A stretch of DNA of 64,000 nucleotides from Ascidiella aspersa (lineage: Eukaryota). Location of the stretch: the NCBI GenBank assembly GCA_963924565.1, contig OZ004607.1:7812001-7876000 (forward strand). The letters run 5' to 3'. The notes under the pieces are model-generated. The model was not told the origin of the DNA and ran no database searches. It was given only the letters and a program-made list of their open reading frames with translations. The position numbers and the translations under genes are program-made. Positions 291 through 59,234 of the stretch are shown here, in pieces (positions within the stretch are counted from its first letter, which is position 1; every line of letters begins with the position of its first letter).

Positions 291-5488
<5,198 letters not shown>

Positions 5489-10692: not shown

Positions 10693-10944
10693 AAGCAGAT
10701 GCGCATCCGTCTCAGCCCGACGGCGACGAGCGAGAGAGGCGCGATTTCGATCCCAGTAAGCCGGTCTTGAACTTAACGTTCGACTGCGACCTTTGCCTCA
10801 CCCAAGTTGTGCAGCAGCTGCTCGGTCCTAGCAGCAGAAGGAGCAGCGGCATCATCCCCTTGCGACCTTCATGTGCCGCCTGCGCCGTTTCCTACGCACA
10901 AGAGGCGCTAATGCAGTCGGGCGGCCCCACCAACTATAGATGAA

Positions 10945-39200: not shown

Positions 39201-42200
39201 ATAGAATCCTGAAATCAGCTATTGCTGACAGGCATCGTGTATAACCGAGTATTGCTCATCCAGCAGTTTTATTATAAACAATAGACGTTTTCAAGTGCTA
39301 TACAAGACACTTTCATCAGGATAATGCAATTGCAAGCAATTTGTCACATTATAAGTAATCTGTTTTGCAAGATATGCCATTATCCTGATGAAAGTGTCTC
39401 GTATAGGACGTCGAAACTAAGTTGAATCGTCGATTGTTTATAATAAAACTGCTGGATGAGCAATACTCGGTTATACATTATGCCTGGCAGCAATAGCTTA
39501 TTTTAGGATTCTATGTTAATAATATTTTAGTATATCGTGGTAAAATTTAAATGTCCATAAAACGTATTTTTTATTGGAAAGATATCGGATAGTACTGAAA
39601 TGTAACGTTTGACAATGTTCCACTTATATCAATTCACGATTTGAAATGATTTGCTATAACAACTGAAAATATAATAACATGGTTCTGATATAACTATAAC
39701 CATTGGACGTTGAGTTATAGTAGAGCGACATCTTAAATACGTTCTGTTTTTAAATAATTGTATATTTTTTTTATCATATGTACGATTCTCAAGTCTTCGA
39801 AATATGTTCCTTAGTAATTATAAATTTCTGTCCATAATCTCTGATCAGGACCGTTTTTATTTTTTGGCTTTTATCCAAGATTTTGACCAGGTCATATATT
39901 TTATCTATTTATAATTTTTAATTTCTAACTTCATATTAAAATGTAGTCACTTTAGTGTTTAGGCCTATTGTAAGCCTAATTAAATGCGAAGAATATTTGT
40001 CTATCTTTATTAACAGTTTTTTTACATTAAGATTATTAGCCTTGTGTAGAACATAGATAATGTATTTTGGAGAACATAAAAGTAACATCTTCGGTTTTCA
40101 AACCGCTCTCTTTCTACTTTCTCTGCTCCTTCTTAGTTCTTCTATAGTTCAAAAAACTCATGCTTCATTTAAACCAACTTAACGGTCGAGCGTACAATGA
40201 CCTTTCAACTGTCGTCTTATCCAGCTGTCGCGTCTATTAGTGTCGGCTCTCTGGGAATGCGACTTGACATAATTATAGCTAACTTGTGGTTTAAAATGGT
40301 CCAAGGTTTAAATTTGCGAATGACGCGTATAAGCGGTTTTGCTAATTTTAAAAGCGAACAAAACGAACCGCTAATGGAAGTTTAACGTCAATGGTCCGTC
40401 ACCAAACCGGATTAAATGCTTTTATGTAACGCCAATGTCATTTCCTAAATCACTTTCTGTTCGGCCAATTAATTATTCTAAAGTGGTGGTTTAAGTGTAT
40501 CAATGGGGGTTAAAACTGTTTTTTTTTTAAATGAATCGTCGACAGATTTAACAACACATTCAGAAAGTTTTATTGGATAATGAACAATGTGGGGGTAGTC
40601 TTCACATAGACTACCATGGAAATGGGGCAACATGTGTTTATAAAGATACTAACCACAAAAATACGTTTAGCTGATCGAAGCACCACAAGCCCGCATAAAA
40701 ATCAAACGGTTATTAAGGTTTGATTGTCGACTAAATGGATCTCATAAAAGATTTGAGGTTTACTTGTAATCCTGTTGGTTCGATATGGATCAGTTAGACC
40801 AGTGGTTCTCAACCATTTACTTTCTTGGCCCAATTTCGTTGCACAAAAATTATGTGGCCCAATAAATGTTTATGAAAAAACAACTATATGAAATAGGTTT
40901 AGAACAAAACACAGCAGAACATGTTTGAAAACAGATTATTTCTTTAACCGTACAATAGTGAGATACTAGCTGCTGAACAATATATTTACCTTCCTTCTGT
41001 AAAATTAAGTGTAGTGACACAAATAAAACTTAATTCTTCATTAAATCTAGCTTTATAAAATTGGTCTGTGGCTCACTCAAAATGTTCCCATGGCCCACTA
41101 GTGAGCCATGGCCCACTGGTTGAGAACCGCTGAGTTAGACGAAGAACCTTGCCTGCTAATCATATAAATCCAAAAAGCAGCGCAATTTACAAAAGCTTTT
41201 GGGCGGGTTTGCTGCATAGCTTGATTAAGCAAAGGTGGAGATCGTTTACTCTTGATGGTGAAATTATCTCTTAGGCAAAAACCGGATCGAGGTATAGGCC
41301 AGTTTCCATGGACGCTTTTAATTGGTGCAGACTTCCCTACCAAGTCATGTTTTTATGTTTTCCATTTTGGGTCTACAGTAGTAACGTGACGTCTCTACAT
41401 TCAGCCCCGACACACCTATTTTCGCCCTGCTTTATACGATTTGTGCACAGCTAAGAAGTAAACCGTCATTAGCTGAAGACCGCCTGTGAAAATACGTCAC
41501 GAATTCTTTGATATTTTTAAACAGAAAAGCTTGTCTCGACGATATGCAACAAAGCAATAAAACAATTTACAGCCTTTTGTATAGGGCTGTGAAAACAGGC
41601 TAATCAATACTTTTTCATTCATTAATCATTTAGAGAAGATAGGATAAAACACTATAGCCCCAAAAAACTGGCGCCTTCTAAACAACATCGTAAACAATGG
41701 CGTCACGATTTTTTTTCTGTCTTAAGCGCGAGCCGAAGACGTTCAGGTGGCGACCAGGTACGATTTGTCTTCGTGCATAATTCATCCACGTTCATTGGCG
41801 CGCACGTGCCTTTCGCGCGTGAATCGTACGCGTAACGTCTGCGGATTAACGTCCGCAACGTAACGACGTTGAAGATAATTACGCGCGTGATTTCGCAAGG
41901 CGTAAAGAAGCCGTTAACCAAGTCAAGCAGTTTGGCGTTTTATAGTTTGGAAGTTTTATTACGCTGTAGGGTTTTCGCGAATATGTTACCTCTCTAACAA
42001 ATAGCGCGTTTTGTGATTATGTTCGAAAAGTCCCAATTGTACTTCAAGGAAAAATTTAACAAAATGTGATCATTTTTTTTGTTTTTTTTTGCTTTTTTTT
42101 TCCACAAAGTGTGTTTTAGTTTTACTAATTTTTTACTAAAATTTGCAAAAAAAATTTAGTGTTACGAAATTTAACTATAATTTTACTGACGTTTTCCCCC

Positions 42201-45200
42201 CAATTCGTTTTTTTTAAAAATAGTGTTAAAAAATAGTTGTCAGTTTCAATAACGAAAAGTTTCCCAGTTTCACGAAATGTGATTCAATTTAACGAAGTAA
42301 TTTCTATTTGAAAATGATTTTTACTTGATGAAATTTTTGAAATGATTTTACTTGATGTGATCCATGTTCGCGAAGCTTTTTCAATTTAGCTTACCGTTTC
42401 CGAATTTCATGAATTGTAAAAAAATCCCGTCATGTTATCCTACACAATATCTAATGTTATTTGCTGCAAAACGCAATACAACACTTTATACAGTTCGAAC
42501 TCTCCTAAAAGCCTGTAGGTGTATTCTACGTCAAATCAAGCAAACAAACGTCCTATACGTGGAATTCCGCTACACCTGTTTTACCGCGCTCGAGCACGAA
42601 ATCAGTGTGGTCTCCAAATTGCCATCTGCGCATTTATTGTAGTGAGACAGTCGTTGTATGTCGTTGCAAGAGAGAAGGACGTCTATTCGAGACTAATGAA
42701 TAATTCAAATCACCACCTTGCAATGATCGCCCGATCCGGAGCACTACTCTGTCGCTTGGTGTATTGAGGATTGGGCTCAGTGCGCTATAATTAACAGGGC
42801 AAAATTAAAACAAGAAATTTTTGTAGACAAAGCCTTTGGCTGCCATTGTCAACGGACTTTAGGATTTTTTGGTAGATGGTGATAAAGAATGTCGCTCTTC
42901 ATAGACGTGAATGATTTTAAAAGGATTTCAGTAAATACCTGTCAGAAATTCCTATATTAAGAACCGCCGAACAATATTTCCTAATTTGAAAACAAAAAGA
43001 GTCTTGTATAAAGTGATAACAGCGAAAATTTTAAATGTCACAAATAATTTTTTAACCCTGGTGATTTGATCACGGCGAAATTTTACTTTGAGGTACTGCA
43101 CTGCAATTGCACGCCCAACACACACTCAATAACCCACGCACACACGTTCAACAGTGCCTTCATCTGTCTAGCACATCAAATAGAAGACCCTCGTGTTTAC
43201 TATTATATTAAACCGACCGATGTTAATTGATTCCGGCAATAATCGAAATTCCCGTCAAAGATTTTTTTCGTTTCGACGTCGATCAACCGCGACCCGCGAC
43301 CCGACGATCGACCAGGATCAAATTGGTCGAAAGATAATCGCACTTTCTCTGTCAGCCTAGGTTTACGTGGGTAGGAACCCGCTTAATGTCCTTACGATCG
43401 TTACTGAATCGCCCGATATATATTTTTAGCACAATTGTGAATGGATCAGTGTAACAAAATTCCAGCAATGTATTAAAAGCAGTGTATAAACATTTTGAAA
43501 AGCAAGGAGAAGCTCTTTTAACTTAATTTAAACTTTATTAGTATATTTTGGAAAATGTTAGACCAATTCTGCTAATTTGGTTTTTACTTAAAAAATTGAC
43601 TTGGCAAAGTTATTGCTTAGGTTCGTAAATTCCACAGCTATACAATTTTTAAATGTATAAGTGCAAGGTTTTCTTAGATTTGAAGCTACAATTAATGGCC
43701 ATCCAAACTTCGATGTCTTTAAATTGGCCACTAAATTTCCCAAAAGACCGATCGAGTAACGCACGAATTAGTTTCCTCCCACGCTTACCAGTACGAGCGA
43801 ACTACTTGCTATTACAAAGTGCGTTAAAATTTTAGGCTGAGGGTCACTGCCTTTAGAAGTTTGTGCTCTATTAAACGCTGTTTTTAGCACGCCTCACTGG
43901 GCATAAATTTCCACAATCTGTTAAATTGCTAAGCGTTTTAGGCAATTACTTTTAATCCGAAGTTAAAGATAATCTAAATTCTAGATCGATTAATCGGGCG
44001 AAGTGCGGATTAATTTTGAATCACGTATTTAATTTCGCGGATTAAAAAATAGGATTGGTTATGGTTGCACTATACACTGTGGAATCATTTACCATACATG
44101 TGACCATACTGAAAAACAGGAACGTATTTTAAATATGTGCCTCCCTCCTTGGCACATGTTTCAAGGCACCAGAAAAATTGTTATGACAGACACAAAATGC
44201 AAAAGTGTGTGCAGCCATTTACTGAAAAATATATAAAAGTATCACTTGGCCAACTGACTCGATAACAACCCCTTGTTTTTTTAACCTTTTGCTACTTGTG
44301 GTTAAATTTGTGGCCAAAAATAAAAGAAAAACAGAAATCAAAAAAAGAAAAAATAAATGAATCTCCCTATTGATTTATCATGCTTATTCGCGAAAACGCA
44401 AAACTTGTACCAATGTTTTACTTAACATTTTATTTAGGAGCCTATGATACAAGATTTCGCGTGTTTGCCTTTGGTAGGCCCCGAACCTTAAACGCCCAGA
44501 GCCATTGCCTGAAAATTGCCTTGTATAAGGAACATAGAGTAAACCGATTGTTTTTTCAACCTGAACAACAACAGAAAGTGCATTCACGTGCAAATCGTGG
44601 ACGACGAGGAATATGAGAAGAACAAGAGCTTTTCCATTGAGATCGCGACGCCCAGAATCGTGGCCGAGGACGGCGAGTCAGGTTTGTGGCATCCGTCAGT
44701 CGCCACTGACAGGAACACTTGCCGTGTCCGCATGCCAGTGTTCTTAGTGTGTGTCGCGAGGCTTGGGCTTCGGTAGGATGCTCGGTTTGTTCATTGTCAT
44801 GTCTTGGAGTCTCTGGCGTTTGTTTGCTTTTATCACGCCGTGGCCACGTCACTGTTGTCGTTGTTTTATTTTGTTGTTGTAGTTGCGGAATGAGTTGTCC
44901 ACTTTCATGTTTGCCTGATCTTTACGTAACGTTTTGCCTGAAAGAGTCCGTTTTCGACTCACAGAAATCACGCTTTGCTTAGGGAGAATATTAACATTGC
45001 GTTTACAGCAAATTAGAGCGTATAGCGCTTTTTTATTGAAGGCAGCAGCCTCTGTCCATTCCTGGCTAAGAAACATTTTCTTAGATAATTTTCTTTATGG
45101 GTAAACTTCCATGGATTTACATTAAAAATTCCAAGATTTTGACGTCCTATGCAAAACAACTGAATTGGGGTGTTACAAAGTAATGTCACAAGGCGTTTTG

Positions 45201-48200
45201 CATGGTACATCAAAATATCCGAGTTTTCTTATAAATTTCCCATAATAGCGGCGACTGCGTTATAAATAGCAGCAACAGAATATTACAAGACGGTTTGCAG
45301 GTTATTTTACACGTCTACGCCATTACTCGCTACGCCTTTTAAGCCATTAGGCAGGAAAAAGAAGGACGTTTTGGTGTCGGGGCGTCTAGGAGTAGTTTAG
45401 ACCCTTGCTCGTCGGCAAACCCAAAAATGAACTGGAGCGCCGGTTTGAGCTCGCGCAACGGATAATATTGCGAAACCTCATTACGAGGCTGGTTTCGAAT
45501 CTCCAACGACCGACATCAAAAATAAATGAGACGAGGGTTGAGGGATACGAGTTTGTAACAGATGCAGCTGTATTGTATATTCCACTAATACTGCAAAAGT
45601 AGGCGTAGGTGGACAAGACGTCCAGCAAAAATACTTTCGATATACGTTTGCACGTTTGACTGACGTCAGTTAAATTTAAGGACACGTTAATTAGGAAACA
45701 AAGATTTATCAAATACTATCCCAACTCAAATGCTTAAAATGGATAACGTTTAACACAGTCTCACTCAAATATTTATTTTTTGTCATCACACCTATCAAGG
45801 TTAAATTAAAACGGTTGGCCTTCCTTTGTAAGATTTAACTAGGTGCACTGGGGTTTAGCTCTTTTCAATAGACACAGCATGCTTGTAATAGGCCTTTTGT
45901 TGCTAGAGTTTTGGGATAATTTATGAGGTGTAAACAGCACTAGGCCCTGGAAGGCCCATTCTCACTTTACTTGAGAATAACTGTATTGATGTGCTTGTAT
46001 GGCTTCAGGTTTAGCAGACTTACACTTGCACATAGATGACACACCGCTGCGATGCTAGATAAACTTATTCTACTTTGAAGTTCAAAGAATTGCGCGAGTT
46101 TGTTTCCAGGGCATGGTCATTTAAAAAAAATGCTGCCTCTCAAAAGGATATTGGTTCAGGGTGTGTGACACAGAATACATATTAAGTAAATACAAAGTTC
46201 GTTATACTGTTCCAAGGTTTTAATAAAACAACATACATTATTAACGGTATACTTAAGTGTATATGAGGTTGGAGCAAGGCCTGTGATAAACACAAAGCCC
46301 ACACAACTAGGATATGTAAGCAAACACTGCAATGAATAAAGTTGTGGAAGTCTTAAACTCAAGTCTGCCAGCCAACTCAAGCACTTAGCTACTATAGGTA
46401 ACTTCCAACATACAACGACAATGTGAGATTCCCGGTTTCTAAAAAGTTTAAAAAAGTTAACAAAACTATAGTATCTATAGTACAACCAGAAGCGTACAAA
46501 CGCACATGGTAATGGTTTGGGCGTTGGGCACGTGCAACCGTTTACCGTTTTTTTTTAAATGTATTGAAAACAGCTATCGATTAATACTTGAGTTGTGATA
46601 CGGTGGGTAAAATAACTAAAATCTGAGGAGACCTCAGTTTTTCTGCGTTTTGTTCCATGTATTTGCAACAACTAATAATGTATAATTTACAAATATCCAG
46701 GTCGTCATGATTTTACGTATTTTTTCCATTCCAAGTTGCAAGTGGATTGACTTAAAAGTTAAAACCTAATGACGTTGTTTTAAAGTCCGAACAGTCTGCA
46801 GTCTAAACCCGTTCTGGGTCACTTTGAGTAGCGATAAGGGGGAGCCTGTCCCCGTGAAGCAATAAAATCAAGGGTTCACTCGGTGTCGAATGACACGCAG
46901 TCGCAAGACATAGTTGGCCAGGTTTTGTGGCCGTTACCGGTCCGCTCTTTTTGTCTTCTCTATGTTTAAGCAGCTTGCAAATTTCTGAAAGACAGCAGCC
47001 TGGCACCTTAACCTTGACTATAGTTTAAATCGCAGGAAAGTTGTTTCGAAAATGGTAATTTGACGTCTTCAAGCTATAGTCATGGCGTGTAAGATTCTCT
47101 TGCTTTGACAGTGACTCCTTTGATGTATAAAATGCCATTTAATTTGAGATAATCATTCGATAGCGAGTGGAAAAGCTAGTTGCTATCTCTTAAGTTAGGC
47201 GACTTTAACCGGAGTAAATTGACTTACCATGATAATAAACTTGGTAAGCAAGATATTTGTCAAATTTTCTATTTCCCAGTCAAGGTCTACGTAAATAAAT
47301 TGGAGAAGTTAGGCCGTAAACACCTTGCTCAAAGTTCTTCCAGGGTAAAACAACACTAAAACGTTAAAAAAACACTAAACCAAATAAAATCAAAGACTGC
47401 CTTTGCACAAATATAGAGACCCGGAAAAGGCTGAAAGGAGAAAAGCGGAAATCCGACCTCCGTGGCCACCGAAAGCGGCCAATTAAATTGTGTGGTTTCG
47501 CCGTCGCCTCTTTGTCTGCAATTGCGCCGAACTTTTTCACAACCAACGTCAAGGTTCAGCTCTCGACTCTTCCCCCACTCTATACCTCCTGGCGATTCTC
47601 CCAGACCCCAGTGTTCCGGGAGTTTTGCCGCAGTCGCTGGAGATTTTAATGGTCTGTGCCTTTGCGGGATTTCGCGGAATTGAATTGCGCCGAATCCCGT
47701 CTATTCCTGTAGCTTTTCGTTGCCTTTGACGAGTAAAACCTGTCGGTTTTGTTTTGCCAAAGAATCCTGGAGGGATTTACCGAAGTCTTCTTAGATAACC
47801 TGGTTACGTCTCAATTGGCGAGAAGTCATTTGACCTGCAGAGACGAAGTTGCAGGTGTCGCATTACAAAGTAATTGGGGTTGTTTGAAGAGATTGGCTTG
47901 CGTTCTGCGCAGATGCAAACGTTGTTCGGCAAATTAGGTTTGCAGAAATGTGTGACAACGTTTTGAGATCACCTGATCTAATTCATTTACTTTGTATTAA
48001 TCAACCTGTAATAAAAGTCGCCTCGTAACGTGTTCACAATGTGTAGATATCCAAACATGTAAAAAATAATGATTAAGACGGATTTAAATGTTCGCCATGG
48101 TTAACAATACGGCGGTATAAGTGAACTCGGAATTTTAATCGCAGTTTCTCGTTTTTCTCCCGGAAGGTTTAATTAAAGCTATAAATAGTGTTTATTCAAA

Positions 48201-51200
48201 AAGGTTAAACGCTTCCAAGCTATTTTTTTATCGAAACCCCTAATGGTGAATAAGAATCTGACCTTGGGTAGATTACTCATAACTTTTGGAGTGTAACTCT
48301 TACAATACTCCTACAACTCGGAAAAAATGTGTAAAGAAGAAACGGGCGATATCAATTCATGTCAATTTGCATGGTGTGGCTCTTTGTGGCGCTAAACCTG
48401 ACTACAAAATAAAGATCTGTGACGGTGTCGCCACCCTCGTCCCAAAGCATGGGCGCAGGCGCGGCGTTTGAACTCCCAAGGTCGCGTTAGGGGTGTAACG
48501 TGAAGCACTGGGCCACGCATTCTCTTAAGCCGGGAAGACGCGCAGACGTTACGCACGTGTGGGAATGTAAGGCCCCAGTCATGGCGCGTTTGTTCCTTGT
48601 AAGCAGAGCGACGCACCGACGCCCCGGGCTGCCTTGACGCGCTCCTCTTCTAGAGTTACCACCGTGGACGATGTTATCGATGCCTGTGCGACCGAGAAAT
48701 TCTAAAAACCTGCCATTTTGGAAGCGGTTTTCTTTAGCTGAAAGTACTTGTTTTTTAAGACAAGTGAGACGAACGTTGCTCTACAGCTGCGTCCACTTGT
48801 TGAGTGGAAAAATTGTTGCCCCAACTCACTTGCGCCTGGTCTAACGGTGAATGTTGGTGGACCAATTTTGTACGACACGTTGTGTGGCTTCTCTAGCCGT
48901 TTTTCAGTTTATCTTTTTTAACTTTACATTTTAAGGTATTTAAACCCTAATTGAAAGCAAATCAAACTCAACTGTAAACTGTCGTTCAACCGTTGTACGT
49001 GGCCATTATTTTGGCATTTCACCCATAGACGCACAAAATGCTTGGCATTCCCATCCATGTTGTGTTTTTCACTGAAGTTTTGTCCTGTGCACTTTTATGA
49101 GATTTAATGTCACTAGGGATAAGTTCATTTGTATAATAAAACCAATTGCGTGTTTGCCTCGAATCGTTGGTAATAACAGCAGGAGTTTCGCTTTAATTTA
49201 CAAAGGGCCCTTTTATTGAGCTTTTATTCCACAGTCAATGCCCCCGTCAGGCCGCCCACCATTTGCAAATCTCGCGTGTCGAATCTCTGATAAGGCGCAA
49301 ACGAGACTTTCAAAGTCGTATGAAAACCATCCGAAGTTGGTTGACGACACAATAAACTCAGGAGCCTCGGTAATAGGCAGCTGTTGGCTATTTTGTGGAT
49401 AAAGTGTTGGCGTATATTCACGTATTGCTGATTGCTTGGGATGATTAGCGAGCGCTGGATATTCGTGTCATGGGTTCACGAGTTCACACGTTTTACGCAC
49501 AAAGTTTTTGCCGGCAAACTTTCAAGTAACATGTGCAATTGGAGAGGTAACATTTTTCAAACAGTGACAGTCCGCACATTTTTACTAACGTTTCGAGCGG
49601 GTTAGGACTTAATTAACATTATCCAAACCGTACGGGCAATTTTGCTTGTTTTTGCTTTGAAGAGCTAGTAAAATGAGATATAATTATTCCTTCATCTGAC
49701 AATTAATATAAGGTAAAATGATAAGGATACAAAAATGCCGTAATGCAGACCACAGGATTTCATATATGGCAATATCCGGACTGCAACATATTTCGAACTC
49801 TATATAGAGTCTGGCTTTAACTTGAATCTTATCATGCAACTCATGGCCCCTAACAACTATAGGTAAAACTAAGTTTGGTTGATTTGATATTATAAGCTTG
49901 AACTTCTTATTACCTGAGGAACAATCCCAACGCCAAGACTCTTAACCCCGCTCTCAGAAGATCTTCCTGCCTCTTTTCTCTTTATCTTCATCATCTTCTG
50001 CTTTCCTGTCCTTCGTTTTTTTCGGACTTTCCTCCATTAAGAAGCCACTGAGAGTGTTTTGATTTAACCCGGGCTGGCGTTTGCACAGGGCGTTGCTGCA
50101 CGTGAAAATCATCGACAGCAACTGCTACCATAAGCACGCCAAATTCCGGATATCGCTCTGCGCGCCCTACGAGCCTAGCAAGTCATTCGGTGAGTATAAT
50201 ACACTTCGGCAACGTTAAACCGCCCGGGAAAAGTGGGTTAATTTAACATTGAACCTTCTTCACGAAGAAGCAATGATCAACTAACACGTCCCTGAAATCG
50301 CATAGGTTCCAGTTTAAAAGTGTATCTGTTTTGCGTGTTGTATTTAGCGTAGGCGTACATCTAGTCGTGCATGGTTTGTGTTGCATTTGTGACGTGGAAT
50401 CGCACCACCTGCTTTATAGTCTGCACTTGTGCTCCATAAAACAAAACATATATGCGTTTTGAAAGCTGTGAATATGGTTAACATACTGAAGTGAAAACGT
50501 TTTCAAAAGTAGCTTCAATAATGAAAATGTGTCAACTTTTATTTGTTAACGAAATTTTTTTATCATAAAACAAACTCCACATTCTGTGTCCCATTTTGAT
50601 TTAGGTATCACCGAAAATTATGTATTTTTCGTTGTAAAAATATATTTGCGTCTTTAGCAGTTAAACTGCTGTTTCCTTCCAAACCAAATATTTCTCACAC
50701 AACGTTGACCACATTGGGTTAAATTTTTCGTTTAAATAAGTTACGGCCCTTATTCCAAACACAAAACCTACATTTGCAAATTAACAAAAAAATGTTTAAA
50801 TAAATAAAATACCTAAAAATTCTCACGTCCCCAATAATCTTTGTTCCGGACGTTGCAGGAACGGACGTTGGCAGCGACTCGGGGATCAACGGGAAGGGAG
50901 ACGACGAGTCCAACAAGACGATCTCGGAAGAAGAAGAGGAGGCAAGAAGGATCGCAGAGCTGGGGAAGCCCCGACTCGGAGTCAACCCGAGCATTGAGAT
51001 CGTGATTGAGGAGAGCTACGAGTTTAAGGTAAACACAAATACAAGTGTCGGGGTCTTATGTTTCCGCTTCCAATCGCTTTTTGATCTAATTGTTCCTTTC
51101 AAATCTCCTCCTGGTATAATTGTTCCGTTTCGATTTCCTCCCTTATCTAATTGTTCTCCAACAATTATTCCTCTTGATCCATTGTTCCTCCTCCACATGG

Positions 51201-54200
51201 AGGACCTTCTGATCCAGCTTGAAGTCTTCGACAAGAGGATAATTAATTAAATTTGATTAATATCAAGAAAAAAAAGTAAAATAATAAAACTATGCAAAGT
51301 CTACTTTGAATCTAAACAAACCCGCCATGTTTCGAGTAGTGTAATTCTACTTCAAAGTTAACATACGAGTTAGGTAAAGGGAGAGTTAAAGACTGCAATT
51401 AATTAAATGCTTATTTGGAAAATGATTGAATATTAGGTTTTCTTATTTCGTAGCGTGTTGAAATGTTAACTTAATTTAAAAAGCTTGATAAATAACAAAA
51501 TTCTCACAAATTTAGGCAAAGTTTAGACAATATTTTATAATCATATTCACTACAGCATTGTCACTGTCAAAATTTCATAAAAAGCGGTTAATGCTACGAG
51601 TTTAAGCTAAATGGAAGAACTAAGGAGTGCAATAAATAAAGTGTTTCGTTTTAAGTTTATTTTTTGAGGGGTTTGGGACAACATTACGCTTTCTTTTTTC
51701 TTGTTATGTCTTTATTTCAATTACCTTGTAACTTGTTTAAATGTGGCCTATAACATACAACACACGCTCTGCAAGCTGCATTATATGCAAAAACTGTTCA
51801 TCTGGGAACGAGGCAGTTGCCACGAATATACTTCTTTTTTTACCTAAAGGGCAGAACGTATGGATAATTACCTCCACTTGGGATATTTGACGTTTTAGAG
51901 GGGTTAGTTTTTGAAAAACGAATTTTTTTAATAGGCTCTATTTTTTTTTTTTTTTTTAAATAAAAAAAACTGCAAAGTTTCTCAATTGAAACCGGATTCT
52001 CATTGAAATGTACATCTAGATTCACTTTTTTAGAAATTTCAAGGGTAATAATATAATTTTGTATTCAAACGCTAAAAAGCAAAATTAGTACCATACCTTC
52101 ACAATTTTTAATAATCAATTGTTTTTTTTATGTTTTTTCAACGAGGTAAACATATTTATGTTGCCGTTATTTTCCAACTTCATGTTTGTTGAACATTTTG
52201 TTGTTTTACAGTTTCTGGCTTTTAATCTGTTGACGTAATTTATCTCAACCATATTTTCCTTTCGCTTTGGACAAATTTAAAAATGCTAATAATTCTCCGT
52301 TTGTTAGTAAAACAAAGATAGGTATACTTGCGTCCGTTTTATTATTTTGTTTGACATTTAGCTAAAAGGGTTGCAAAAGTCATAAAACATCGTTTAGCTG
52401 AACGATTATATCTGGTCAGCGCTACTTTTTGTAATCTTGACTGGTTTTATTCGGGTCTTCCACGACGCATAATCTTGCTTTGTACCGTATATGCAGGGCG
52501 TTGTAAAATATTGATTTTAATGTGTTGCAATGTACGAACACTTGAGTGGTCGGGCGATTCTAAGAACATCGGGCTTTTAGTAGATATTTGTGTTAATGTT
52601 TACGGTGGAATGACAGGTACTAAAATCACTTAGCACTGCTTGCCAATGAGGTCCAGTTCTTGAATTACCTTAAGTGAATACGTCTTTGATATAAGTCGAA
52701 CTTAAACAATCACTTTTCACTGTCACATATACCAAAACGTTTGTCTGGATACGGCAGGTTTATGACAAAAAACAATGACTTCTTGTTGTAAATTACCTAG
52801 ATTGAAATCTTTGCTGATCCACTTGGACAATCAAGCTATTTTAAGTTCATCCTGACTCCCTTTTTTAATAATGTGGATCTCTATATATGTTTTACTCTTA
52901 CCCGTAACCTTCAACAACATATACTACTTTATTTATGCATAATAATTTATTGGAATAAAAAAACACAATTTGTTGAGGAGGGGGGCTAATGTTCTTTTAT
53001 TTCAGATTGTTTTAGTTTGTTCATATTTGTACCAATAATATTGGTTTATTGCGATTGCTCAAATAAGGTAGTGTTTATTTTCTATCGTAAACACGCATGA
53101 TTTATAGAATCTTACACTATCTTTTCTCCAATGATGGGCTTCCGGGAATGAGTTGCCGCTGGCAAGGCGTTCGGTTTACAACATATCAATGCGGGAGTGC
53201 ATCCGAAAGAGTATATTAACAGTGCCTAAGAAACAACGGCGTTTTAACAGGGCATGAAAATACCCGCCGATTCGCCGATTTGTGTCACCTATAGGCTGAC
53301 TTTTACAAGTTCGAGCTAGTGGCCAGTACACGTTTTGGGATGTTGACTCAAGGGCCGCCAAAGCAAACACAAGACGCTTTATGGGAGACCCGACTGCAAA
53401 ATGTAGCTGCCCGTTCAATCGGCCTGGCGTTTACGGCCGCCTTTCTATCACCGGGCGAATTCCGAGGACCGCGCTTACATGCAAAGTGCGGAATTCCAGC
53501 AGCCTTCCAGACTATTAAAGCTGCATACCGTAGGACATGTAAATACGTGTAGGTCCTGTCAAGATGTAAAACTGCCGCTTCGAGACACTGCGATTACGAT
53601 TTGACTTATTAAAACAGTTTTATGTATAAGTTGCACCTTACGACACATTATGATCAACTGGATTAGTTGATTAACCGATTTACACGCATTTTGTAGACAA
53701 AGTATATTCATCTTTATAGGGGGAACTTTATACGGATTTTTGTGTGAACGTAATACATTTTAGAGCATAGAAGAGTAAAAAAAATGTAAACTTGAATCAA
53801 AACCACTTTACTTCACTCATGTTATGAAATAAAACCATTTGTTTCCAAGTCGCTATTTCTCATTCAACGATCAACGTGTTAAGGAAAGTGGCTCGTTGCC
53901 TTTATGAAACTAACCTTGGGTTTAATTGCAACGCAGAACACAGTGGATCGTCTGATCAAGAAAGCAAACTTGGCGGTGATAGTTGGAACTTCATCGTGGA
54001 GGGAACAGTTCGTGGAAGCCCTCACTGTCACTGGAGGTATGTGCATTGGGCTGAAACAACAAGTGTGGGAGCGGTTATTTAAAGAAATATTAGCCAAGTA
54101 GATATGATGTATTGCTACCAGGCATAGTTTACACTAAAAGGAGGCTCTTCCGGCATCTTAAAGCATCATGAATAGGTAGCCGAAACGTTGGATGAAATAA

Positions 54201-57200
54201 ATAAGCGCCGATTGAGCTCCTTCTGGTATATTAGTCAAAGGTTGCAACCCAAGAGCACAATTTTTTCAAAGCACTAAAGATTCCTCAATGTACTAGTACG
54301 CTTGTTACACCATCATCTTTTGAGGTCTTTTTGTTTTTCGTTGTATAGTTTTCCCTTGCGATAATTTGTATACCGTATGTTATGCATTTATCCGGCGTCA
54401 ATAGCTACGCAAAGGCAATTGCTAATTAGGACAGAATATAGCTCTTTACACTAGGTTACTGTTAAACAATCGTAAAACGCCGTTTACTACAGAAAAAACC
54501 TACCCTACTACGATCACTACACCCACATATCTAACATGTTCAAACATACAACAACAACAATATGTAACAGACTAATGGAGAAGGCGTATAAACTTCTCGG
54601 GTTAACAAGTTGAAGCGTATATGTGTAGTTCTAACTGGGATCAGCCCCTTAAAAGTCTTACCGGCCAACGAACGGCATTCGTATCAATAGTGCATCTCTT
54701 CTGTTTGATTGACAGGTGATGACGAAGACGGCGGTGAGGAAGTTCAGACAGAACCGACGTGCTTCGATTACGTCATGCACTTTCTCACTCTCTTCTGGAA
54801 GGTGAGAACGTTACTATGCAAACCGGTTAATTTCGTGGCCAATTTTATACCTTTTAAGCCCATCTTCTAAACCGTTTTATTCCACAGTTGCATACGCAGC
54901 AAACAATGTAACTACATAAGTCTTGAATGGTAGAATTTTGAGCTACGTTGGCCGATTAAGAATTGTCTAGAAAAATTGTTAAAACGATTAATTTGCCTAG
55001 GATTTGAGGACTCTTATTGATTTTCGTTTTAACATGATTTTCTTCAGTTAAACAGAGCTACTTTTAATTATTTTTAGGTTGTGATGTAAAGTTTGACAGC
55101 TATTTTGTAAACCAGAATTTCCATAACAAGCACAAGGGCTATTAATACTAACCAAAGAACAAAGGGCGTTTTCGACTGTTCCTTGACAAACAAACAAGTA
55201 AATGTTGGCATAACTTATAGAAGTCAAAGTTTAAAAATTTGCCCAAAACTTGTGTCGACTGAGCTATATCGGTTCTATAAACCTTGATCGAATTCTTGAC
55301 ACCTACGAAGCGATAAAGAATTACTTTGTGTCAATCGAAAGCAAGGAAGTCGTAAGGGTTTGCAATTTAGTATGGGCCCTATATCATAATATTTGATGGA
55401 CATTCTTTTTTGTAGCCTTTCATTTGTGAATCAAAGTGCAGAATCCAAGAGTATGGGTGTTGCAGGAAGGACAGCTAAATTGAATAAATTTTTTATACAA
55501 TTTCTCTCCCTGTCAAATCTATTTGTACCATGCAGTTATTTAGTCAAGTTAAATATGGACTGGTATTTCAACTATCGAAACATATCATGACTTTTAAACG
55601 TGAATACGAGTGAAGTTGGTAAATTCGTTGACTTTAATCGTTGCTTAAAAGCTACCTATCTTTCATCTCAATACAAATATTCAGCAAACACACTATTTTA
55701 TACGTATTAAATAAAAAAAAAGCCTGAAAAGAAAAGCGAATATTGCACAAAATTTACCAAACAAAAACACTAAATTTTAAGTCAAAGTCACTTGTTTATT
55801 TGCTCAACGAATTTAAAATCAGTGTCTTCAGTGTCTGTAACTGAATGTCTGGTCAAGTATGATAAAAAACTTGTGTTAAATGTACTTAAACGAAATGATA
55901 TAAGTCACAGTCTAAGCACTTTGTTCATTTACTTAAGTCAACTAATTTGAAAACAGTGAAGTGCACTGAAACTAAATGACTTAAGTTAAAGTCAAAGTCA
56001 GTAGAACAAAGTAATTTAAAAATACAGTCTCAGAGAACTAATACTAAATGAATTAAGTGAAGTCAAGTCAAGTATGTTGAAATAAAAACACCTATATTAA
56101 CTACACTGAAAAAGATGACTTCAGTCACAGTCGAAGTAACTTGTTAAGTGCTACCAATCAACCAATTTGAAAACAGTGTCTGAAATGCACTAAAACTAAT
56201 TATGACTTAAGTCAAAATGAATGTCAGTAGCACAAATGACTTAAATCAAGTCAGGCAATTTAAAAATAGTATCTTGATTTACTTATAGGCTACTAAATGA
56301 TTCAAGTCAAGTCAAGTATGTTGACAACCATGTATTTTAACTACCCTGAAAAGAGTACTTAAGTCACACTCAAAATAATCTATTCATTGAAACCAGTCGA
56401 TTAATTTAAAAACAGTGCTTTAAGTGTACCGAATTGAACTCAATCACTCTAGAAGCATTACAACACCGATCAACACGGGTTTGTTTTGCAGCTTCTCTTT
56501 GCCTTTGTGCCACCCACCGAGTACTTTGGAGGCTGGGCATGCTTCACCACTTCCATCCTTCTCATCGGTCTGCTAACGGCCGTCATCGGCGACGTCGCCT
56601 CCCACTTCGGCTGCGTGGTCAATTTGAACGACGCCGTCACCGCCGTCACAATCGTCGCCATGGGAACCAGCGTGCCGGGTGAGTGATCATTTGGCGCGAC
56701 ACTGCCAGTTGTGCTGTTTAGCAGGGATGGCTGTGCTGTTGACTGTTGACTATGTTTAGAGATGCCCAATACTGGATATTTATTCCGATACCAAATATTT
56801 GGAGCAAAATATATCGCGATCCGATACCAAATTACGTCATTGCTATGCTTAAACAAGAAAATTGGCTGAATTGAAACGTTCAAGAGTAGTTTCAATAGGT
56901 TATTAGGCAAAAATTAAAAAAAATAGTGATTTTCAGTTGTTAACCTACTACTTTTTTGATAAATTTACATCCATAGGTAGAAATTGCTGTGTTTGGTCGC
57001 AAATCTTGGCTAAAATTCTTATAATAATTTGGTATCGAGTCGGCACCGGTCCGATATTATCGGGCATCCTTAACGGTGGTTAAGTGGCTGATGTCCTTCA
57101 AAATGGCTGGCGAACGATTTGTTTGTTGGCATATGGGAAAACAAGACTGATATTTATGGCAAAGCTTATCGTCTTGCGCCTTATTGGACTTTGGCCATTT

Positions 57201-59234
57201 TGACTAAAGTATAAGGACAAAGAATGTTAAAAAAAATACATTTCTGTTATAAGTAATAATTTCAATGTTACAGAGCGAAATGTATTCTGCACTTTACTAG
57301 CTTCAAGTAAAAAGTGTTTGAAAAATGTTTTGCACTTTACGAGCTTGTAAAGTAAAAAGTGTTTGAAAATTTGCGTTGGAATTTCTGACCCCGCTAAACC
57401 GCCATATGTTCCATTACACGTGAGCAACAAGAATCGTGCGAACATGTAGCATTAACCAGACCCAAACATCGTTTGAACGTTGTCGTTCCTATACGTAAAA
57501 CTCATCAACCTTAAGGTTAGGTATACACAGTCTGGCCGACGCATATTGCCGTCGAACGTTAACGACAAACCCCACTCATCTGCAAACACCCAATTTATGA
57601 CGAGCAAATTTGTTCAGCTCTGCGTACAACAGGCCGTATGCGACGCTATTTCGGCTTTATTTGATGAATCACGAACAACGCGACGTTTTTTTTATGTGTG
57701 CGTTGTTCCTACAGAAAAACAAACGCGCGTCGCAAAAATGCTTGGTGCGTGCTCATATAGCGCCAGCAACAAGTATAACCATTTAACCACTACATTTGCA
57801 TATTTTTGAAAGTTTTTCCAACTAATCAACTCATTTTTCCAGGATTGTTCCCATAGCTTAGTCACCTACGTTAAATGCGGGCTAAAATAACCTAGAATGT
57901 TGCTCCTAAAACAAATTAGTTGTATAAACGATCTTTTATGGAAAAAAGAGCATATGATCGTAAGAATATATCGTTGTTTAGTAATGAGTTGAACTTGTAA
58001 TGAAAGCCAAAGTTACCTTTAGCGATTTTTTTGCAGCATTAATGTGCTGCTTGAAACATCGCCGGTGCCAACAAATAAAATAATGCTAAATATTGGTTGA
58101 CTTATTTGAGTCAAAACCCGCAGGTTTGATAAGGCATAAACAAGCATTAGCCAGACGTGCAACCTAAACATAAACTTTGTATTTCAGGTGCTATTTTAAA
58201 ACGCTTCTCGTCTACTCTTAACATGTAATCGATATTTACCAAATTTCACACACCATGCATTGTGCAACGTATACAAGTTTTACCAAGCTATACACGGATT
58301 TTAGCCTAAGTTCAATTAGTGACACATAGTAACGGAAGCATATTATTTTTACTGAGTTTTAATATAAAGAAAGTTTGTGTAAGTTGATTACAAAGTTGAA
58401 TGTTAAAGTAATTATTACACTTCAAAAATGATTCCTCATCATTTCAAAGATGAAAGAGGAGGCCGCCAGGTAAAGAACCTTGATCGTTTCTAGTTTTCTG
58501 CTTCTTTTATTTTTTGTTGGAACCCTTTTAAAACAGTGATGGGCGAGGCAAAACAAATCTTAAGGCGGCGCGAGCGCTCTACTACAATATTTCACTTGTA
58601 TACTGATTCGCTTAGTGTTAAGTCTGTTTTTATGCTGTCCAATGCCTTACATAAAAGTGCTCAAGAAATGACCGATAATATCGGATAAAAATCAAAATTA
58701 CAGTTATTTTTTTTTTAAGGTACCGGTTTTATATTTAAAAAATGGTACTGGCTTTATACTTGAAACCACTGAAATAGATGGTTCGCGTTTTACTACTTCA
58801 AGTTACACGCAAAATAACTCAACTCCCGCCTATTTCCAGACACGTTTGCCAGCAAGGTAGCGGCGGTGGGCGACGAGTATGCCGACGCTTCGATCGGCAA
58901 CGTTACCGGATCCAACGCCGTCAACGTCTTCCTGGGGATCGGCATCGCCTGGACGATGTGCGCCATCTACTGGGCGATCGCAGGCACCACTCCGGAGGAG
59001 AAACTCTTCCGCGTTCCTGCTGGAAACCTCGCCTTCACCGTGACCGTTTTCTCCATCTTTGCCGTGTTCGCGGTGTGCGTACTCATGTTCCGTCGTCGCT
59101 ACTCCAAGATCGGAGCTGAGCTCGGAGGACCGCGCAAGTACAAGATCATCAGCAGCGTGATCTTCGTTCTCCTCTGGCTCTTCTACATCCTCCTCTCGGC
59201 CCTGGACAGCTACTGCGTCATCAGCACCTTCTAG
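28916..59234 (+). CDS. SLC8A1: Sodium/calcium exchanger (SLC8/NCX); join(28916..30286,32094..32204,34135..34488,38771..38934,[44575..44681 or 50089..50189],50859..51028,53937..54036,54716..54801,56492..56678,58840..59234); 1014 aa with the A-like exon
   Basis: Contains alpha-1 repeat ([19 protein letters not shown]), XIP region ([14 protein letters not shown]), [12 protein letters not shown], two Calx-beta domains, alpha-2 repeat ([30 protein letters not shown]) and ELGGP. Splice phases are consistent and the total of 3045 nt is an open frame. Likely co-ortholog of vertebrate SLC8A1-3. Confidence 0.96.
32094..32204 (+). CDS. SLC8A1: NCX exon 2 (start of CBD1: [15 protein letters not shown])
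   Basis: cccag acceptor, gtaagt donor, phase 0-0. Confidence 0.92.
32700..32857. mobile_element. 3' part of a hAT MITE, same family as 62247-62560
   Basis: Shares agctgt.aatgattt..tagtaagta..atatatcaggtaatatatttaaa..ttcgcg..gaga.cc..tg with 62400-62560. Confidence 0.55.
33944..34096. repeat. CA/CAAA-rich low-complexity tract
   Basis: Directly visible; ends ~40 nt upstream of the NCX exon 3 acceptor. Confidence 0.85.
34135..34488 (+). CDS. SLC8A1: NCX exon 3 (CBD1 core: [27 protein letters not shown])
   Basis: aaag acceptor, gtgagt donor, phase 0-0. Confidence 0.94.
35224..35299. repeat. 25-bp tandem repeat x3 (GTACTTTGCTAAGCCACGAACTATA)
   Basis: Directly visible, near-perfect copies. Confidence 0.92.
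36210..36490. repeat. Degenerate ~60-65-bp tandem repeat, ~4 copies
   Basis: ggcc.gcct..aatcctaaagca..tgtttca..gtggccttgt..ccaa.ag recurs. Confidence 0.8.
38771..38934 (+). CDS. SLC8A1: NCX exon 4 (CBD2 N-half: [29 protein letters not shown])
   Basis: cacag acceptor, gtaagt donor, phase 0-2. Confidence 0.94.
39278..39326 (-). ncRNA. Minimal hammerhead ribozyme-like motif (antisense arm)
   Basis: Reverse complement reads CAUUAUC CUGAUGA AAGUG ucuuguauag CACUU GAAA ACGUC UAUUG; perfect 5-bp stem II; first stem I pair is disrupted. Confidence 0.55.
39377..39437 (+). ncRNA. Type I hammerhead ribozyme-like motif (sense to the NCX pre-mRNA)
   Basis: AUUAUC-CUGAUGA(39385-91)-stem II-GAAAC(39413-17)...GUC(39429-31)-GAUUGU; base of stem II is imperfect. 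Confidence 0.6.
40800..41132. mobile_element. Charlie-like hAT MITE, 333 bp
   Basis: TIRs CAGTGGTTCTCAACC / GGTTGAGAACCGCTG with a perfect 8-bp TSD AGTTAGAC. Confidence 0.88.
44575..44681 (+). CDS. SLC8A1: NCX exon 5A (exon-A-like: [35 protein letters not shown])
   Basis: acag acceptor, gtttgt donor, 107 nt, phase 2-1; matches the vertebrate NCX1 exon A motif DDEEYEKNK. Confidence 0.92.
50089..50189 (+). CDS. SLC8A1: NCX candidate alternative (mutually exclusive) exon 5B: [33 protein letters not shown]
   Basis: ttgcacag acceptor, G/gtgagt donor, 101 nt, phase 2-1, open frame; aligns without gaps to exon 5A (HV.I.D...Y.K...F.I....P). Confidence 0.78.
50859..51028 (+). CDS. SLC8A1: NCX exon 6 ([30 protein letters not shown])
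   Basis: ttgcag acceptor, gtaaac donor, phase 1-0. Confidence 0.92.
53937..54036 (+). CDS. SLC8A1: NCX exon 7 ([31 protein letters not shown])
   Basis: cgcag acceptor, gtatgt donor, 100 nt, phase 0-1. Confidence 0.94.
54716..54801 (+). CDS. SLC8A1: NCX exon 8 ([28 protein letters not shown])
   Basis: gacag acceptor, gtgaga donor, phase 1-0; not in the ORF track. Confidence 0.93.
55780..56430. repeat. Degenerate satellite-like array
   Basis: Recurring aattt(g/a)aaaacagtg, actaaatgacttaagtc and aagtcaagtatgttga blocks. Confidence 0.7.
56492..56678 (+). CDS. SLC8A1: NCX exon 9 ([28 protein letters not shown])
   Basis: ttgcag acceptor, gtgagt donor, phase 0-1. Confidence 0.95.
56757..57072. 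mobile_element. hAT-type MITE (family of 1836-2201)
   Basis: tagagatgcccaata / tatcgggcatcctta ends; internal ccgatacc and gacgtaattt-like motifs shared with 1836-2201. Confidence 0.6.
57287..57370. repeat. Tandem duplication, ~44 bp x2
   Basis: tgcactttac.agctt..aagtaaaaagtgtttgaaaa occurs twice. Confidence 0.75.
58840..59234 (+). CDS. SLC8A1: NCX terminal exon ([32 protein letters not shown])
   Basis: ttccag acceptor; TAG at 59232-59234. Confidence 0.95.

What the first reader, a model, noticed from the sequence alone, without database searches (positions are those of the whole stretch)
50089..50189. Hidden mutually exclusive CBD2 exon of NCX that removes the Ca2+-ligand motif (DDEEYEK to DSNCYHK)
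Seen in sequence: 5.4 kb downstream of the exon-A-like exon (44575-44681, 107 nt) lies a 101-nt exon with good splice sites and the same 2-1 phase. It aligns without gaps to exon 5A ([23 protein letters not shown] vs [23 protein letters not shown]; CACGTGAAAATCATCGAC vs CACGTGCAAATCGTGGAC). Including both exons (208 nt) or neither would frameshift, which implies mutual exclusion. Established: vertebrate NCX1/NCX3 use mutually exclusive A/B exons at this position to tune CBD2 Ca2+ binding, and NCX1 exon B keeps DREEYEK. Inference: this exon resembles the local A exon (shared HV) more than vertebrate B and loses the positions equivalent to D578/E579/E580/E582. It may be an independently duplicated Ca2+-blind CBD2 switch. 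Its His/Cys-rich loop could confer pH, redox or Zn sensitivity, which is speculative.
Basis: partly seen in the sequence, partly recalled or inferred. Interest (0 to 1): 0.85.

Follow-up and report, generated by a model that had tools for sequence, protein, structure and literature searches.

The report
Conserved alternative calcium-sensor exon, sea-squirt NCX
The 101-base stretch is a real second version of one exon in a sea-squirt sodium/calcium exchanger gene; it is kept by selection in at least six other sea squirts and already appears in database isoforms of three, it replaces the calcium-binding acidic loop of the second regulatory domain with a non-acidic one, and no RNA from this animal could be checked.

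Summary
Observation confirmed. window:50089-50189 (+) is a 101-nt open exon with AG/GT sites. It has the same phase as exon 5A (44575-44681) of a single-copy ascidian NCX (SLC8) gene.

Its ungapped BLOSUM62 score against 5A is 54. The next-best chance match in the window's six frames scores 34.

It is not a private or decayed copy:
- A related tunicate contig (L002) has a 101-nt exon at the same place and phase.
- RefSeq isoform pairs of Ciona intestinalis, Styela clava and Clavelina lepadiformis differ only by an A-type or B-type exon here.
- A Ciona savignyi model also holds a B-type copy.
- In a tree the seven tunicate B exons form one clade (99/98), with the window's exon inside it.

All B exons lack the acidic DDEEYEK cluster and the Lys matching NCX1 K585. 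A CBD2 that cannot bind Ca2+ is therefore the likely effect; this is inferred, not shown.

Not supported:
- 'Hidden': it is already annotated in relatives.
- The His/Cys sensor idea: those residues are not conserved.
- Independent origin: unresolved. The best tree groups all B exons at 82/89, and the AU test does not reject two origins (p 0.41).

The scan has noted other mutually exclusive exon pairs in this genome, but not this one.

The parts
28919..59231 (+). Single NCX (SLC8-type Na+/Ca2+ exchanger) gene. Exons: about 28919-30298, 32097-32213, 34129-34494, 38771-38934, 5A or 5B, 50859-51028, 53934-54038, about 54694-54855, 56489-56677, 58836-59231.
   Evidence: Pfam hits Na_Ca_ex, Na_Ca_ex_C and Calx-beta on the exon ORFs. 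tblastn of the Ciona protein P0010 and a tunicate transcript protein P0024 maps all exons in order. Best named relatives are Ciona NCX at 72% identity.
38771..38934 (+). Exon 4, the first part of CBD2. It ends with two bases of a Thr codon, followed by donor GTAAGT.
   Evidence: (Calx-beta profile positions 8-70). It holds the VSE and GGGED residues that align with NCX1 E516 and D552.
44575..44681 (+). Exon 5A (107 nt, 35 codons). It carries the DDEEYEKNK motif and corresponds to vertebrate exon A.
   Evidence: phmmer against the PDB hits NCX1 CBD2/CBD12 (3us9, 8sgi, 2fwu, 2kls) at E 5e-9 to 6e-7, aligned to the [17 protein letters not shown] strand-loop. It is 22/27 identical to the Phallusia mammillata A exon.
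49950..50050 (+). Pyrimidine-rich stretch 40-140 nt upstream of the 5B acceptor. The last 40 nt before the AG are only 50% pyrimidine.
   Evidence: pyrimidine fraction 0.75 at -140..-41 against 0.50 at -40..-1. Its role as a distant branch-point or polypyrimidine region is inference only.
50089..50189 (+). Exon 5B (101 nt, 33 codons). It is an alternative CBD2 exon with DSNCYHKHA in place of [11 protein letters not shown] lies at 50087-50088 and donor GTGAGT at 50190-50195.
   Evidence: score 54 against noise 34; too conservative for neutral drift, P = 6e-4; 101-nt counterpart in L002; B-type RefSeq isoforms; tunicate B clade 99/98.
50859..51028 (+). Exon 6, which is constitutive. It starts with two bases that complete the Gly codon begun by the last base of 5A or 5B, and it holds the EESYEFK strand of CBD2.

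Best explanation
window:50089-50189 is the local copy of a conserved ascidian 'exon B' of the single NCX gene. It is a homologous, mutually exclusive alternative to exon 5A.

The spliceosome joins exon 4 (ending at 38934) to either 5A or 5B and then to exon 6 (starting at 50859). Taking both or neither shifts the frame into an early stop, so only one-exon messages give protein.

The exon encodes beta-strands E and F of the second Ca2+-binding domain (CBD2) and the loop between them. Version A carries DDEEYEKNK, identical to the Ca2+-binding NCX1 exon A. Version B keeps the strand core (hydrophobic alternation, Asp, Tyr, Lys, Phe, Pro). It replaces the residues aligned with NCX1 D578, E579, E580, E582 and K585 by Ser, Asn, Cys, His and Ala.

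The likely result is an exchanger whose CBD2 cannot bind Ca2+. Regulation would then run through CBD1 alone, and Ca2+ could not relieve Na+-dependent inactivation, as in the NCX1 exon-B (kidney-type) variants.

Shown: the exon's homology, its conservation and the frame logic. Shown only in relatives' annotation: alternative use. Inferred: loss of Ca2+ binding and its physiological effect.
For: - Anatomy and frame.
- Homology to 5A beyond chance: (54 against a noise maximum of 34).
- Selection since the duplication: A and B share only 52.6% of nucleotides. Placing the same 37 substitutions at random gives a protein score as high as observed in 0.06% of trials.
- Counterpart in another species: L002 has exon 4, exon A, a B exon at 9308-9408 (101 nt, AG/GT, same phase, 15/33 identical) and exon 6, in the same order. 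The introns do not align at all. pS is 0.83-0.97 (saturated), while pN of exon B is 0.375.
- RefSeq isoform pairs that differ only in this exon: Ciona intestinalis XP_078490149.1 / XP_078490150.1 and XP_002126759.2 / XP_018669182.1; Styela clava XP_039248321 / XP_039248320; Clavelina lepadiformis XP_076800121.1 / XP_076800124.1.
- C. savignyi model H2YTJ0 holds a B-type segment downstream of A.
- Tree: tunicate B exons form one clade at 99/98, with the window's exon inside it.
- All seven B exons lack the acidic cluster.
- Published role of positions 552, 578 and 585, and of R578/C585 in NCX1 exon B: PMC9820601.
- An AlphaFold model of the Ciona B isoform gives strand 606-613, loop, strand 622-629 across the B exon.
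Against: - No RNA of this species could be examined.
- The RefSeq isoforms are computed models, and I could not see their read support.
- Every assembled environmental or Logan tunicate NCX transcript I could inspect (about 50 cluster members) carries the A exon only. B may therefore be a minor or tissue-restricted form.
- The B acceptor has a poor pyrimidine tract in its last 40 nt.
- B evolves faster than A (pN 0.375 against 0.22).
- The B peptide alone finds nothing in the PDB, and nothing real among 1.84 billion cluster representatives.
- Loss of Ca2+ binding is read from aligned residues only. The structure model is of low overall confidence (mean pLDDT 54.6), and its loop is below 50.
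Confidence: 0.85

Rival explanations
1. It is a decaying pseudo-exon: a leftover of an exon duplication that is no longer spliced into mRNA and only looks intact by luck.
For: No transcript evidence for this species. Weak pyrimidine tract next to the acceptor. Only A-type exons appear in assembled tunicate transcripts. An open 33-codon frame alone is not rare.
Against: It has the same 101-nt length, phase and splice sites in L002, although the introns are unalignable and synonymous sites are saturated. B-specific residues (KFR, PY.P.K) are shared across ascidian orders. The pattern of change is too conservative for drift. B-type isoforms are annotated in three species.
Confidence: 0.04
2. It is a regulatory 'poison' exon. 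Its main role would be inclusion together with 5A, which creates a stop inside B and sends the message to nonsense-mediated decay, tuning NCX dosage rather than making a second protein.
For: A+B inclusion gives a stop five codons into B. This outcome exists for any such exon pair whose lengths are not multiples of three.
Against: A poison exon needs no conserved protein sequence. Yet B keeps every core residue of the two beta-strands, plus Asp, Tyr, Lys, Phe and Pro, across seven sequences, and pN lies well below pS. RefSeq models use B in place of A, in frame.
Confidence: 0.04
3. Sub-question of origin: the tunicate A/B pair arose by its own duplication, independent of the vertebrate A/B pair.
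For: Tunicate B exons score no closer to vertebrate B than to A exons (mean 27-column scores about 35-48 to vertebrate B against 37-54 to tunicate A). Vertebrate B keeps D[RE]EEY[ED]K while tunicate B has lost it. The AU test does not reject all tunicate exons as one clade (p 0.41). Papers date the pair to vertebrates (PMC2408596; PMC4494069).
Against: The best ML tree puts all B exons on one side of a branch (82/89). Both lineages share the same exon, the same A-then-B order (the vertebrate order is from my own knowledge, not checked here), the same phase, a B shorter than A, loss of the Lys at position 585, and an aromatic residue right after the conserved Pro. Clavelina B even has Arg at position 578, like NCX1 B. 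One duplication is more parsimonious than two at the same exon. With only 27 columns, long B branches and hints of A/B co-variation, neither answer is secure.
Confidence: 0.4

Closest known systems
Ascidian NCX 'exon B' isoforms in RefSeq: Ciona intestinalis XP_078490150.1 and XP_018669182.1, Styela clava XP_039248320, Clavelina lepadiformis XP_076800124.1
   Same: Same gene and same slot between exon A and the [11 protein letters not shown] exon. The exon is 33 residues in Ciona and in L002, as in the window; the Styela and Clavelina B isoforms differ from their A isoforms by +2 and -3 residues. Same non-acidic loop (D-[SNTR]-x-[SCR]-Y-x-K-[RHK]). The P-Y-x-P tail is present in all except Clavelina (PLSK). 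They form one clade with the window's exon (99/98).
   Different: Only 9-15 of 33 residues are identical to the window's exon. The window's His residues at three loop positions and its two Cys residues are mostly private. No isoform model is known to me for this species.
[quoted passage not shown]
   Same: Same exon of CBD2 (strands E-F and the Ca2+ loop). Same phase, with lengths that are not multiples of three. A lies upstream of B in the window and in L002 (the vertebrate order is from my own knowledge). Exon A is almost identical (DDEEYEKNK). B changes positions 578 and 585, which set the number of CBD2 Ca2+ sites (PMC9820601; PMC2408596).
   Different: Vertebrate B keeps most of the acidic cluster (DREEYEK, DEEEYER) and is 34 residues long with a P-x-W..RG tail. 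Tunicate B loses the whole cluster and has a P-Y-x-P-x-K tail. Orthology of the two B exons is unresolved. NCX3 exon B even adds a Ca2+ site, so 'B' has no single functional meaning.
Drosophila CALX1.1/1.2 splice variants
   Same: Alternative splicing inside CBD2 of an invertebrate NCX that changes Ca2+ regulation (PMC9820601).
   Different: The CALX variants differ by five residues in the FG loop, which corresponds to the cassette-exon region. They do not swap the strand E-F Ca2+-loop exon.

Membership tests
NCX (SLC8) Na+/Ca2+ exchanger gene | Two Na_Ca_ex membrane repeats flanking a cytoplasmic loop with two Calx-beta domains | tested here: met
   Pfam: Na_Ca_ex and Na_Ca_ex_C in exon 1; Calx-beta in exons 3 and 4; Na_Ca_ex in the last exons. 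All exons are collinear with Ciona NCX.
Mutually exclusive homologous exon pair of CBD2 (A/B type) | Two tandem exons that are homologous to each other and encode the same segment (strands E-F and the Ca2+ loop of CBD2) | tested here: met
   5A aligns to NCX1 CBD2 residues [17 protein letters not shown].... 5B aligns to 5A without gaps, scoring 54 against window noise of 34.
Mutually exclusive homologous exon pair of CBD2 (A/B type) | Same phase, so that exactly one of the two exons keeps the frame | tested here: met
   107 and 101 nt. 4-A-6 and 4-B-6 stay open; 4-6 and 4-A-B-6 hit stops.
Mutually exclusive homologous exon pair of CBD2 (A/B type) | Transcripts that carry one exon or the other | not testable with these tools
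In relatives, RefSeq isoform pairs differ only by A or B, but their read support was not visible. Assembled tunicate transcripts seen here were all A-type.
Ascidian NCX exon B | Lies between exon A and the next constitutive exon, is 101 nt or 33 codons long, and has a non-acidic loop and a P-Y-x-P tail | tested here: met
   Window exon 50089-50189. L002 exon 9308-9408 has the same length and phase. Motif comparison across seven B exons.
Ascidian NCX exon B | Groups with other ascidian B exons rather than with any A exon | tested here: met
   Clade of 7 B exons at 99/98 in a 39-row tree. Scores of window B to other B exons are 38-78, against 31-50 to A exons.
Vertebrate exon B (orthology) | Common descent with NCX1/NCX3 exon B | tested here: inconclusive
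   The split of all B against all A has support 82/89 (not decisive). The alternative of two origins is not rejected (p-AU 0.41).
Ca2+-binding CBD2 (NCX1 exon-A type) | Acidic ligands at positions aligned with D578, E579/E580 and E582, and Lys at 585 | tested here: not met
   5B has Ser, Asn, Cys, His and Ala at these positions. All tunicate B exons lack them. 5A has all of them. The ligands outside the exon (aligned with E516, D552, E648) are present in exons 4 and 6. Residue numbering is from PMC9820601 and my own count.
Calx-beta fold | The exon-B segment forms the two beta-strands of the sandwich | tested here: inconclusive
   The B peptide alone finds no PDB chain. The AlphaFold model of the Ciona B isoform gives strands 606-613 and 622-629 with block pLDDT of 73, 59 and 79. 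However, the overall model is poor and the alignment is mostly A-type. No joined model of the window's own protein was folded.

The most novel reading that the evidence does not exclude
The NCX A/B exon switch is older than vertebrates. One duplication in the common ancestor of tunicates and vertebrates produced both B exons. The tunicate copy then lost the entire acidic cluster, giving a fully Ca2+-blind CBD2. This would move the published 'vertebrate' date of the switch back to the base of Olfactores. It would also make ascidians, which have a single NCX gene, the simplest system for testing what the switch is for.
Probability: 0.5. Interest if true: 0.55.

Novelty: new member of a known kind. 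Interest (0 to 1): 0.42.

Why it matters
Vertebrates tune Na+/Ca2+ exchange between excitable and non-excitable tissues by swapping this exon. That biology is spread over three or four paralogous genes and many cassette exons.

Ascidians have one NCX gene and, as shown here, a clean two-way switch. Its B version removes every acidic ligand contributed by this exon. This gives a natural 'CBD2 on / CBD2 off' pair in a chordate with one gene and tractable genetics (Ciona).

The papers I could read date the A/B pair to vertebrates. A pair at the same exon in the sister group means either an older origin or a repeat of the same invention. Both are of some interest to people working on NCX regulation and on the evolution of mutually exclusive exons.

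For genome annotation, the practical point is that this exon should be annotated as an alternative coding exon.

Tried and rejected
- Default tblastn of 5A against the window reported only a poor gapped hit to 5B (15.8 bits, E 4.6). My own ungapped scan shows this is a heuristic miss.
- The PDB search with the B peptide found no hit.
- A search of 1.84 billion cluster representatives with the B peptide gave one hit, a repetitive 687-aa protein matched in ten weak stretches. I judge it spurious.
- A region-restricted protein search with the Ciona B isoform returned only A-type cluster representatives, because isoforms fall within 90% clusters.
- Inverted repeats between the introns, tested as a docking/selector idea for mutual exclusion, showed nothing convincing apart from a transposon-like palindrome.
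- Splicing-factor motif scans near A and B gave only a weak GCATG hint downstream of A.
- Gene conversion between A and B: within-species co-variation is marginal (36 of 720 permutations for positions 1-8, 126 of 720 for the rest).
- Nei-Gojobori dN/dS could not be given as a ratio, because synonymous sites are saturated.
Exons were searched one by one by reference. A local script joined exons only to read the frame.
Full report
**What is in the window.** The + strand from about 28.9 kb to 59.2 kb holds one Na+/Ca2+ exchanger gene of the NCX (SLC8) type.
- Pfam finds Na_Ca_ex and Na_Ca_ex_C in a large first exon, Calx-beta in the exons at 34.1 kb and 38.8 kb, and Na_Ca_ex in the last exons.
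- tblastn with a Ciona NCX protein and with a tunicate transcript protein maps ten collinear exons.
- The best named relatives are Ciona savignyi and C. intestinalis NCX, at about 72% identity in exon 1.
- In the region of interest the closest sequence is Phallusia mammillata NCX (22 of 27 residues in exon A).
- The animal is therefore an ascidian. Its assembly is 308.6 Mb in 75 contigs, and the window is C1:7,812,001-7,876,000.

- Exon 5A is 44575-44681 (107 nt) and the candidate 5B is 50089-50189 (101 nt). Each follows an AG and precedes a GT, and the 5B donor is GTGAGT.
- Both read as one base, whole codons, one base (35 and 33 codons).
- Exon 4 ends at 38934 with two bases of a codon, and exon 6 starts at 50859 with two bases that finish a codon.
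- A local frame check shows that 4-A-6 and 4-B-6 stay open. Skipping both runs into a stop, and A followed by B hits a stop five codons into B.
- That script joined exons only to read the frame. No joined model went to any search or fold tool.

**Is the likeness to 5A more than chance?** Yes.
- The ungapped alignment over 24 residues scores 54 in BLOSUM62, with 9 identities (His, Val, Ile, Asp, Tyr, Lys, Phe, Ile, Pro).
- I slid 5A over every position of all six frames of the window. Only 5A itself (179) and the paralogous strand of CBD1 at 34267 (63) score higher, and the best unrelated stretch reaches 34.
- Default tblastn reported only a poor gapped alignment, which is a heuristic miss.
- 5A matches solved NCX1 CBD2 structures at E 5e-9 to 6e-7 over the strand-loop [17 protein letters not shown]. 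5B alone matches nothing in the PDB.

**Has it been under selection?**
- A and B share only 52.6% of nucleotides over 78 aligned bases. When the same 37 substitutions are placed at random on 5A, the protein score reaches the observed value in 0.06% of trials. All six inward-facing hydrophobic positions stay hydrophobic in 1.8% of trials.
- The changes have therefore spared the fold core and concentrated in the loop.

**Relatives.**
- A scan of JGI metagenome contigs with exon 4 returned nine loci. One of them, L002, is a 13-kb genomic contig of a related tunicate (83% identical in exon 4).
- L002 has, in order, exon 4 (2859-3020), exon A (6374-6486), a B-type exon (9308-9408) and exon 6 (10880-11041).
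- The L002 B exon is again 101 nt, follows an AG, precedes GTAAG and has the same phase. Fifteen of its 33 residues match the window's.
- Between the two species only exons 4, A and 6 align as DNA; the introns do not.
- Synonymous differences are saturated (pS 0.83-0.97). Non-synonymous differences are 0.12 for exon 4, 0.22 for exon A and 0.375 for exon B.
- A dead exon would not keep its length, frame, splice sites and 45% protein identity at that distance.

**Database isoforms.** A region-restricted protein search with the Ciona protein, followed by cluster look-ups, showed RefSeq isoform pairs that differ only in this exon:
- Ciona intestinalis X1 (A) and X2 (B), in two versions that probably stand for the two Ciona 'intestinalis' species;
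- Styela clava X2 (A) and X1 (B);
- Clavelina lepadiformis X1 (A) and X2 (B).

An Ensembl model of C. savignyi (H2YTJ0) runs through both an A and a B segment, which at least shows the B copy is in that genome.

The seven B exons share D-[SNTR]-x-[SCR]-Y-x-K-[RHK]-x-[KRW]-[FL], then a hydrophobic strand. All but Clavelina end in P-Y-x-P. In a 39-row tree of exon peptides they form one clade (99/98), with the window's exon inside it.

The exon is therefore old, spans the three classical ascidian orders, and is already annotated in relatives. I found no paper that describes it. On et al. 2008 list only a single Ciona NCX and place the A/B duplication in a basal vertebrate. Abascal et al. 2015 date the SLC8A1/SLC8A3 pair to vertebrates.

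**What it most likely does.**
- In NCX1 the exon supplies positions 578 and 585. Together with 552, these set how many Ca2+ ions CBD2 binds.
- NCX1 exon B (Arg578, Cys585) abolishes CBD2 Ca2+ binding. Such variants cannot use Ca2+ to relieve Na+-dependent inactivation (PMC9820601; PMC2230537, abstract).
- The window's 5A has the full DDEEYEKNK. The ligands outside the exon (aligned with E516 and D552 in exon 4 and E648 in exon 6) are present.
- 5B has Ser, Asn, Cys, His and Ala at the positions aligned with D578, E579, E580, E582 and K585. Every other tunicate B exon also lacks these acids and the Lys.
- I therefore expect the B isoform to have a folded but Ca2+-blind CBD2. This is an inference from aligned residues.
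- An AlphaFold model of the Ciona B isoform, built on a 36-row alignment, gives strand, loop, strand across the exon (606-613 and 622-629). The model is poor overall (mean pLDDT 54.6) and the loop is below 50, so it adds little.

**What is not supported.**
- The His/Cys-rich loop is not a conserved feature. The Cys at the position aligned with 580 recurs only in Clavelina, and the His residues are private. A pH, redox or Zn role therefore has no comparative support.
- 'Hidden' is true at most for this genome.

**Origin.**
- The best tree puts tunicate and vertebrate B exons on one side of a branch and all A exons on the other (82/89, below the level I would trust).
- Forcing all tunicate exons together, as two independent duplications would predict, costs 1.5 log-likelihood units and is not rejected (p-AU 0.41).
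- Simple similarity does not link the two B groups.
- Several features favour one origin: the same exon, order and phase; a shorter B; loss of Lys585; an aromatic residue after the Pro; and Arg578 in Clavelina.
- Against a firm answer stand the short alignment, the long B branches, and a hint that A and B co-vary within species (36 of 720 permutations for positions 1-8).
- I rate the two origins as roughly even.

**Limits.**
- All assembled tunicate NCX transcripts that I could inspect in environmental and Logan clusters carry exon A. B may be a minor or tissue-restricted form.
- The search of 1.84 billion representatives with the B peptide gave only a spurious repeat protein.

**Verdict.** This is a real, conserved, mutually exclusive alternative exon of CBD2: a new member of a kind known in vertebrates and already annotated, though apparently undescribed, in other ascidians. 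It is of moderate interest, mainly because it offers a one-gene chordate model of the CBD2 on/off switch and reopens the dating of the A/B pair.

Noticed in passing
window:38985-39693: A nested set of inverted repeats (arms up to 127 nt, 78-92% complementary) lies in the intron just after exon 4. I saw only the repeats.
   Followed up: no
window:44730 (GCATG 49 nt after exon 5A); L002: 133, 213 and 217 nt after its exon A: GCATG (an Rbfox-type motif) occurs downstream of exon A in both species. It is absent within 300 nt of the L002 B exon and occurs only 180 nt after the window's B exon. This would fit neuron- or muscle-biased use of A, but the counts are small.
   Followed up: partly
window:44575-44600 and 50089-50115; also L002, Ciona and C. 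savignyi exon pairs: The first eight residues of A and B tend to change together within a species: His4 in both here, Ser4 in both in L002, Thr6 in both in Ciona, Pro6 in both in C. savignyi. The permutation test gives 36 of 720. This could reflect gene conversion or a shared structural partner.
   Followed up: partly
L002:6374-6486: The exon A of this related tunicate reads DDEAYQK and is 113 nt long. Even the 'Ca2+-binding' version has lost two acidic residues there.
   Followed up: no
protein P0137 (Ciona savignyi H2YTJ0): This Ensembl model strings exon A, extra residues and exon B into one protein. It is an annotation artefact that nonetheless reveals the B exon in that genome.
   Followed up: partly
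window:6623-7136 (- strand frames): A long tandem repeat whose translation repeats a 17-residue unit (51-nt period) in three frames.
   Followed up: no
window:291-5485 (+ strand): Open stretches upstream of the NCX gene look like exons of another gene. From memory only, the one at 5150-5485 is Cys-rich and resembles a scavenger-receptor (SRCR) domain. No family search was run.
   Followed up: no
window:44576-44680 against 50090-50188: Technical point: tblastn with default heuristics missed an ungapped alignment of score 54 and reported a gapped one of score 29. Short-exon duplicates can be lost this way.
   Followed up: yes
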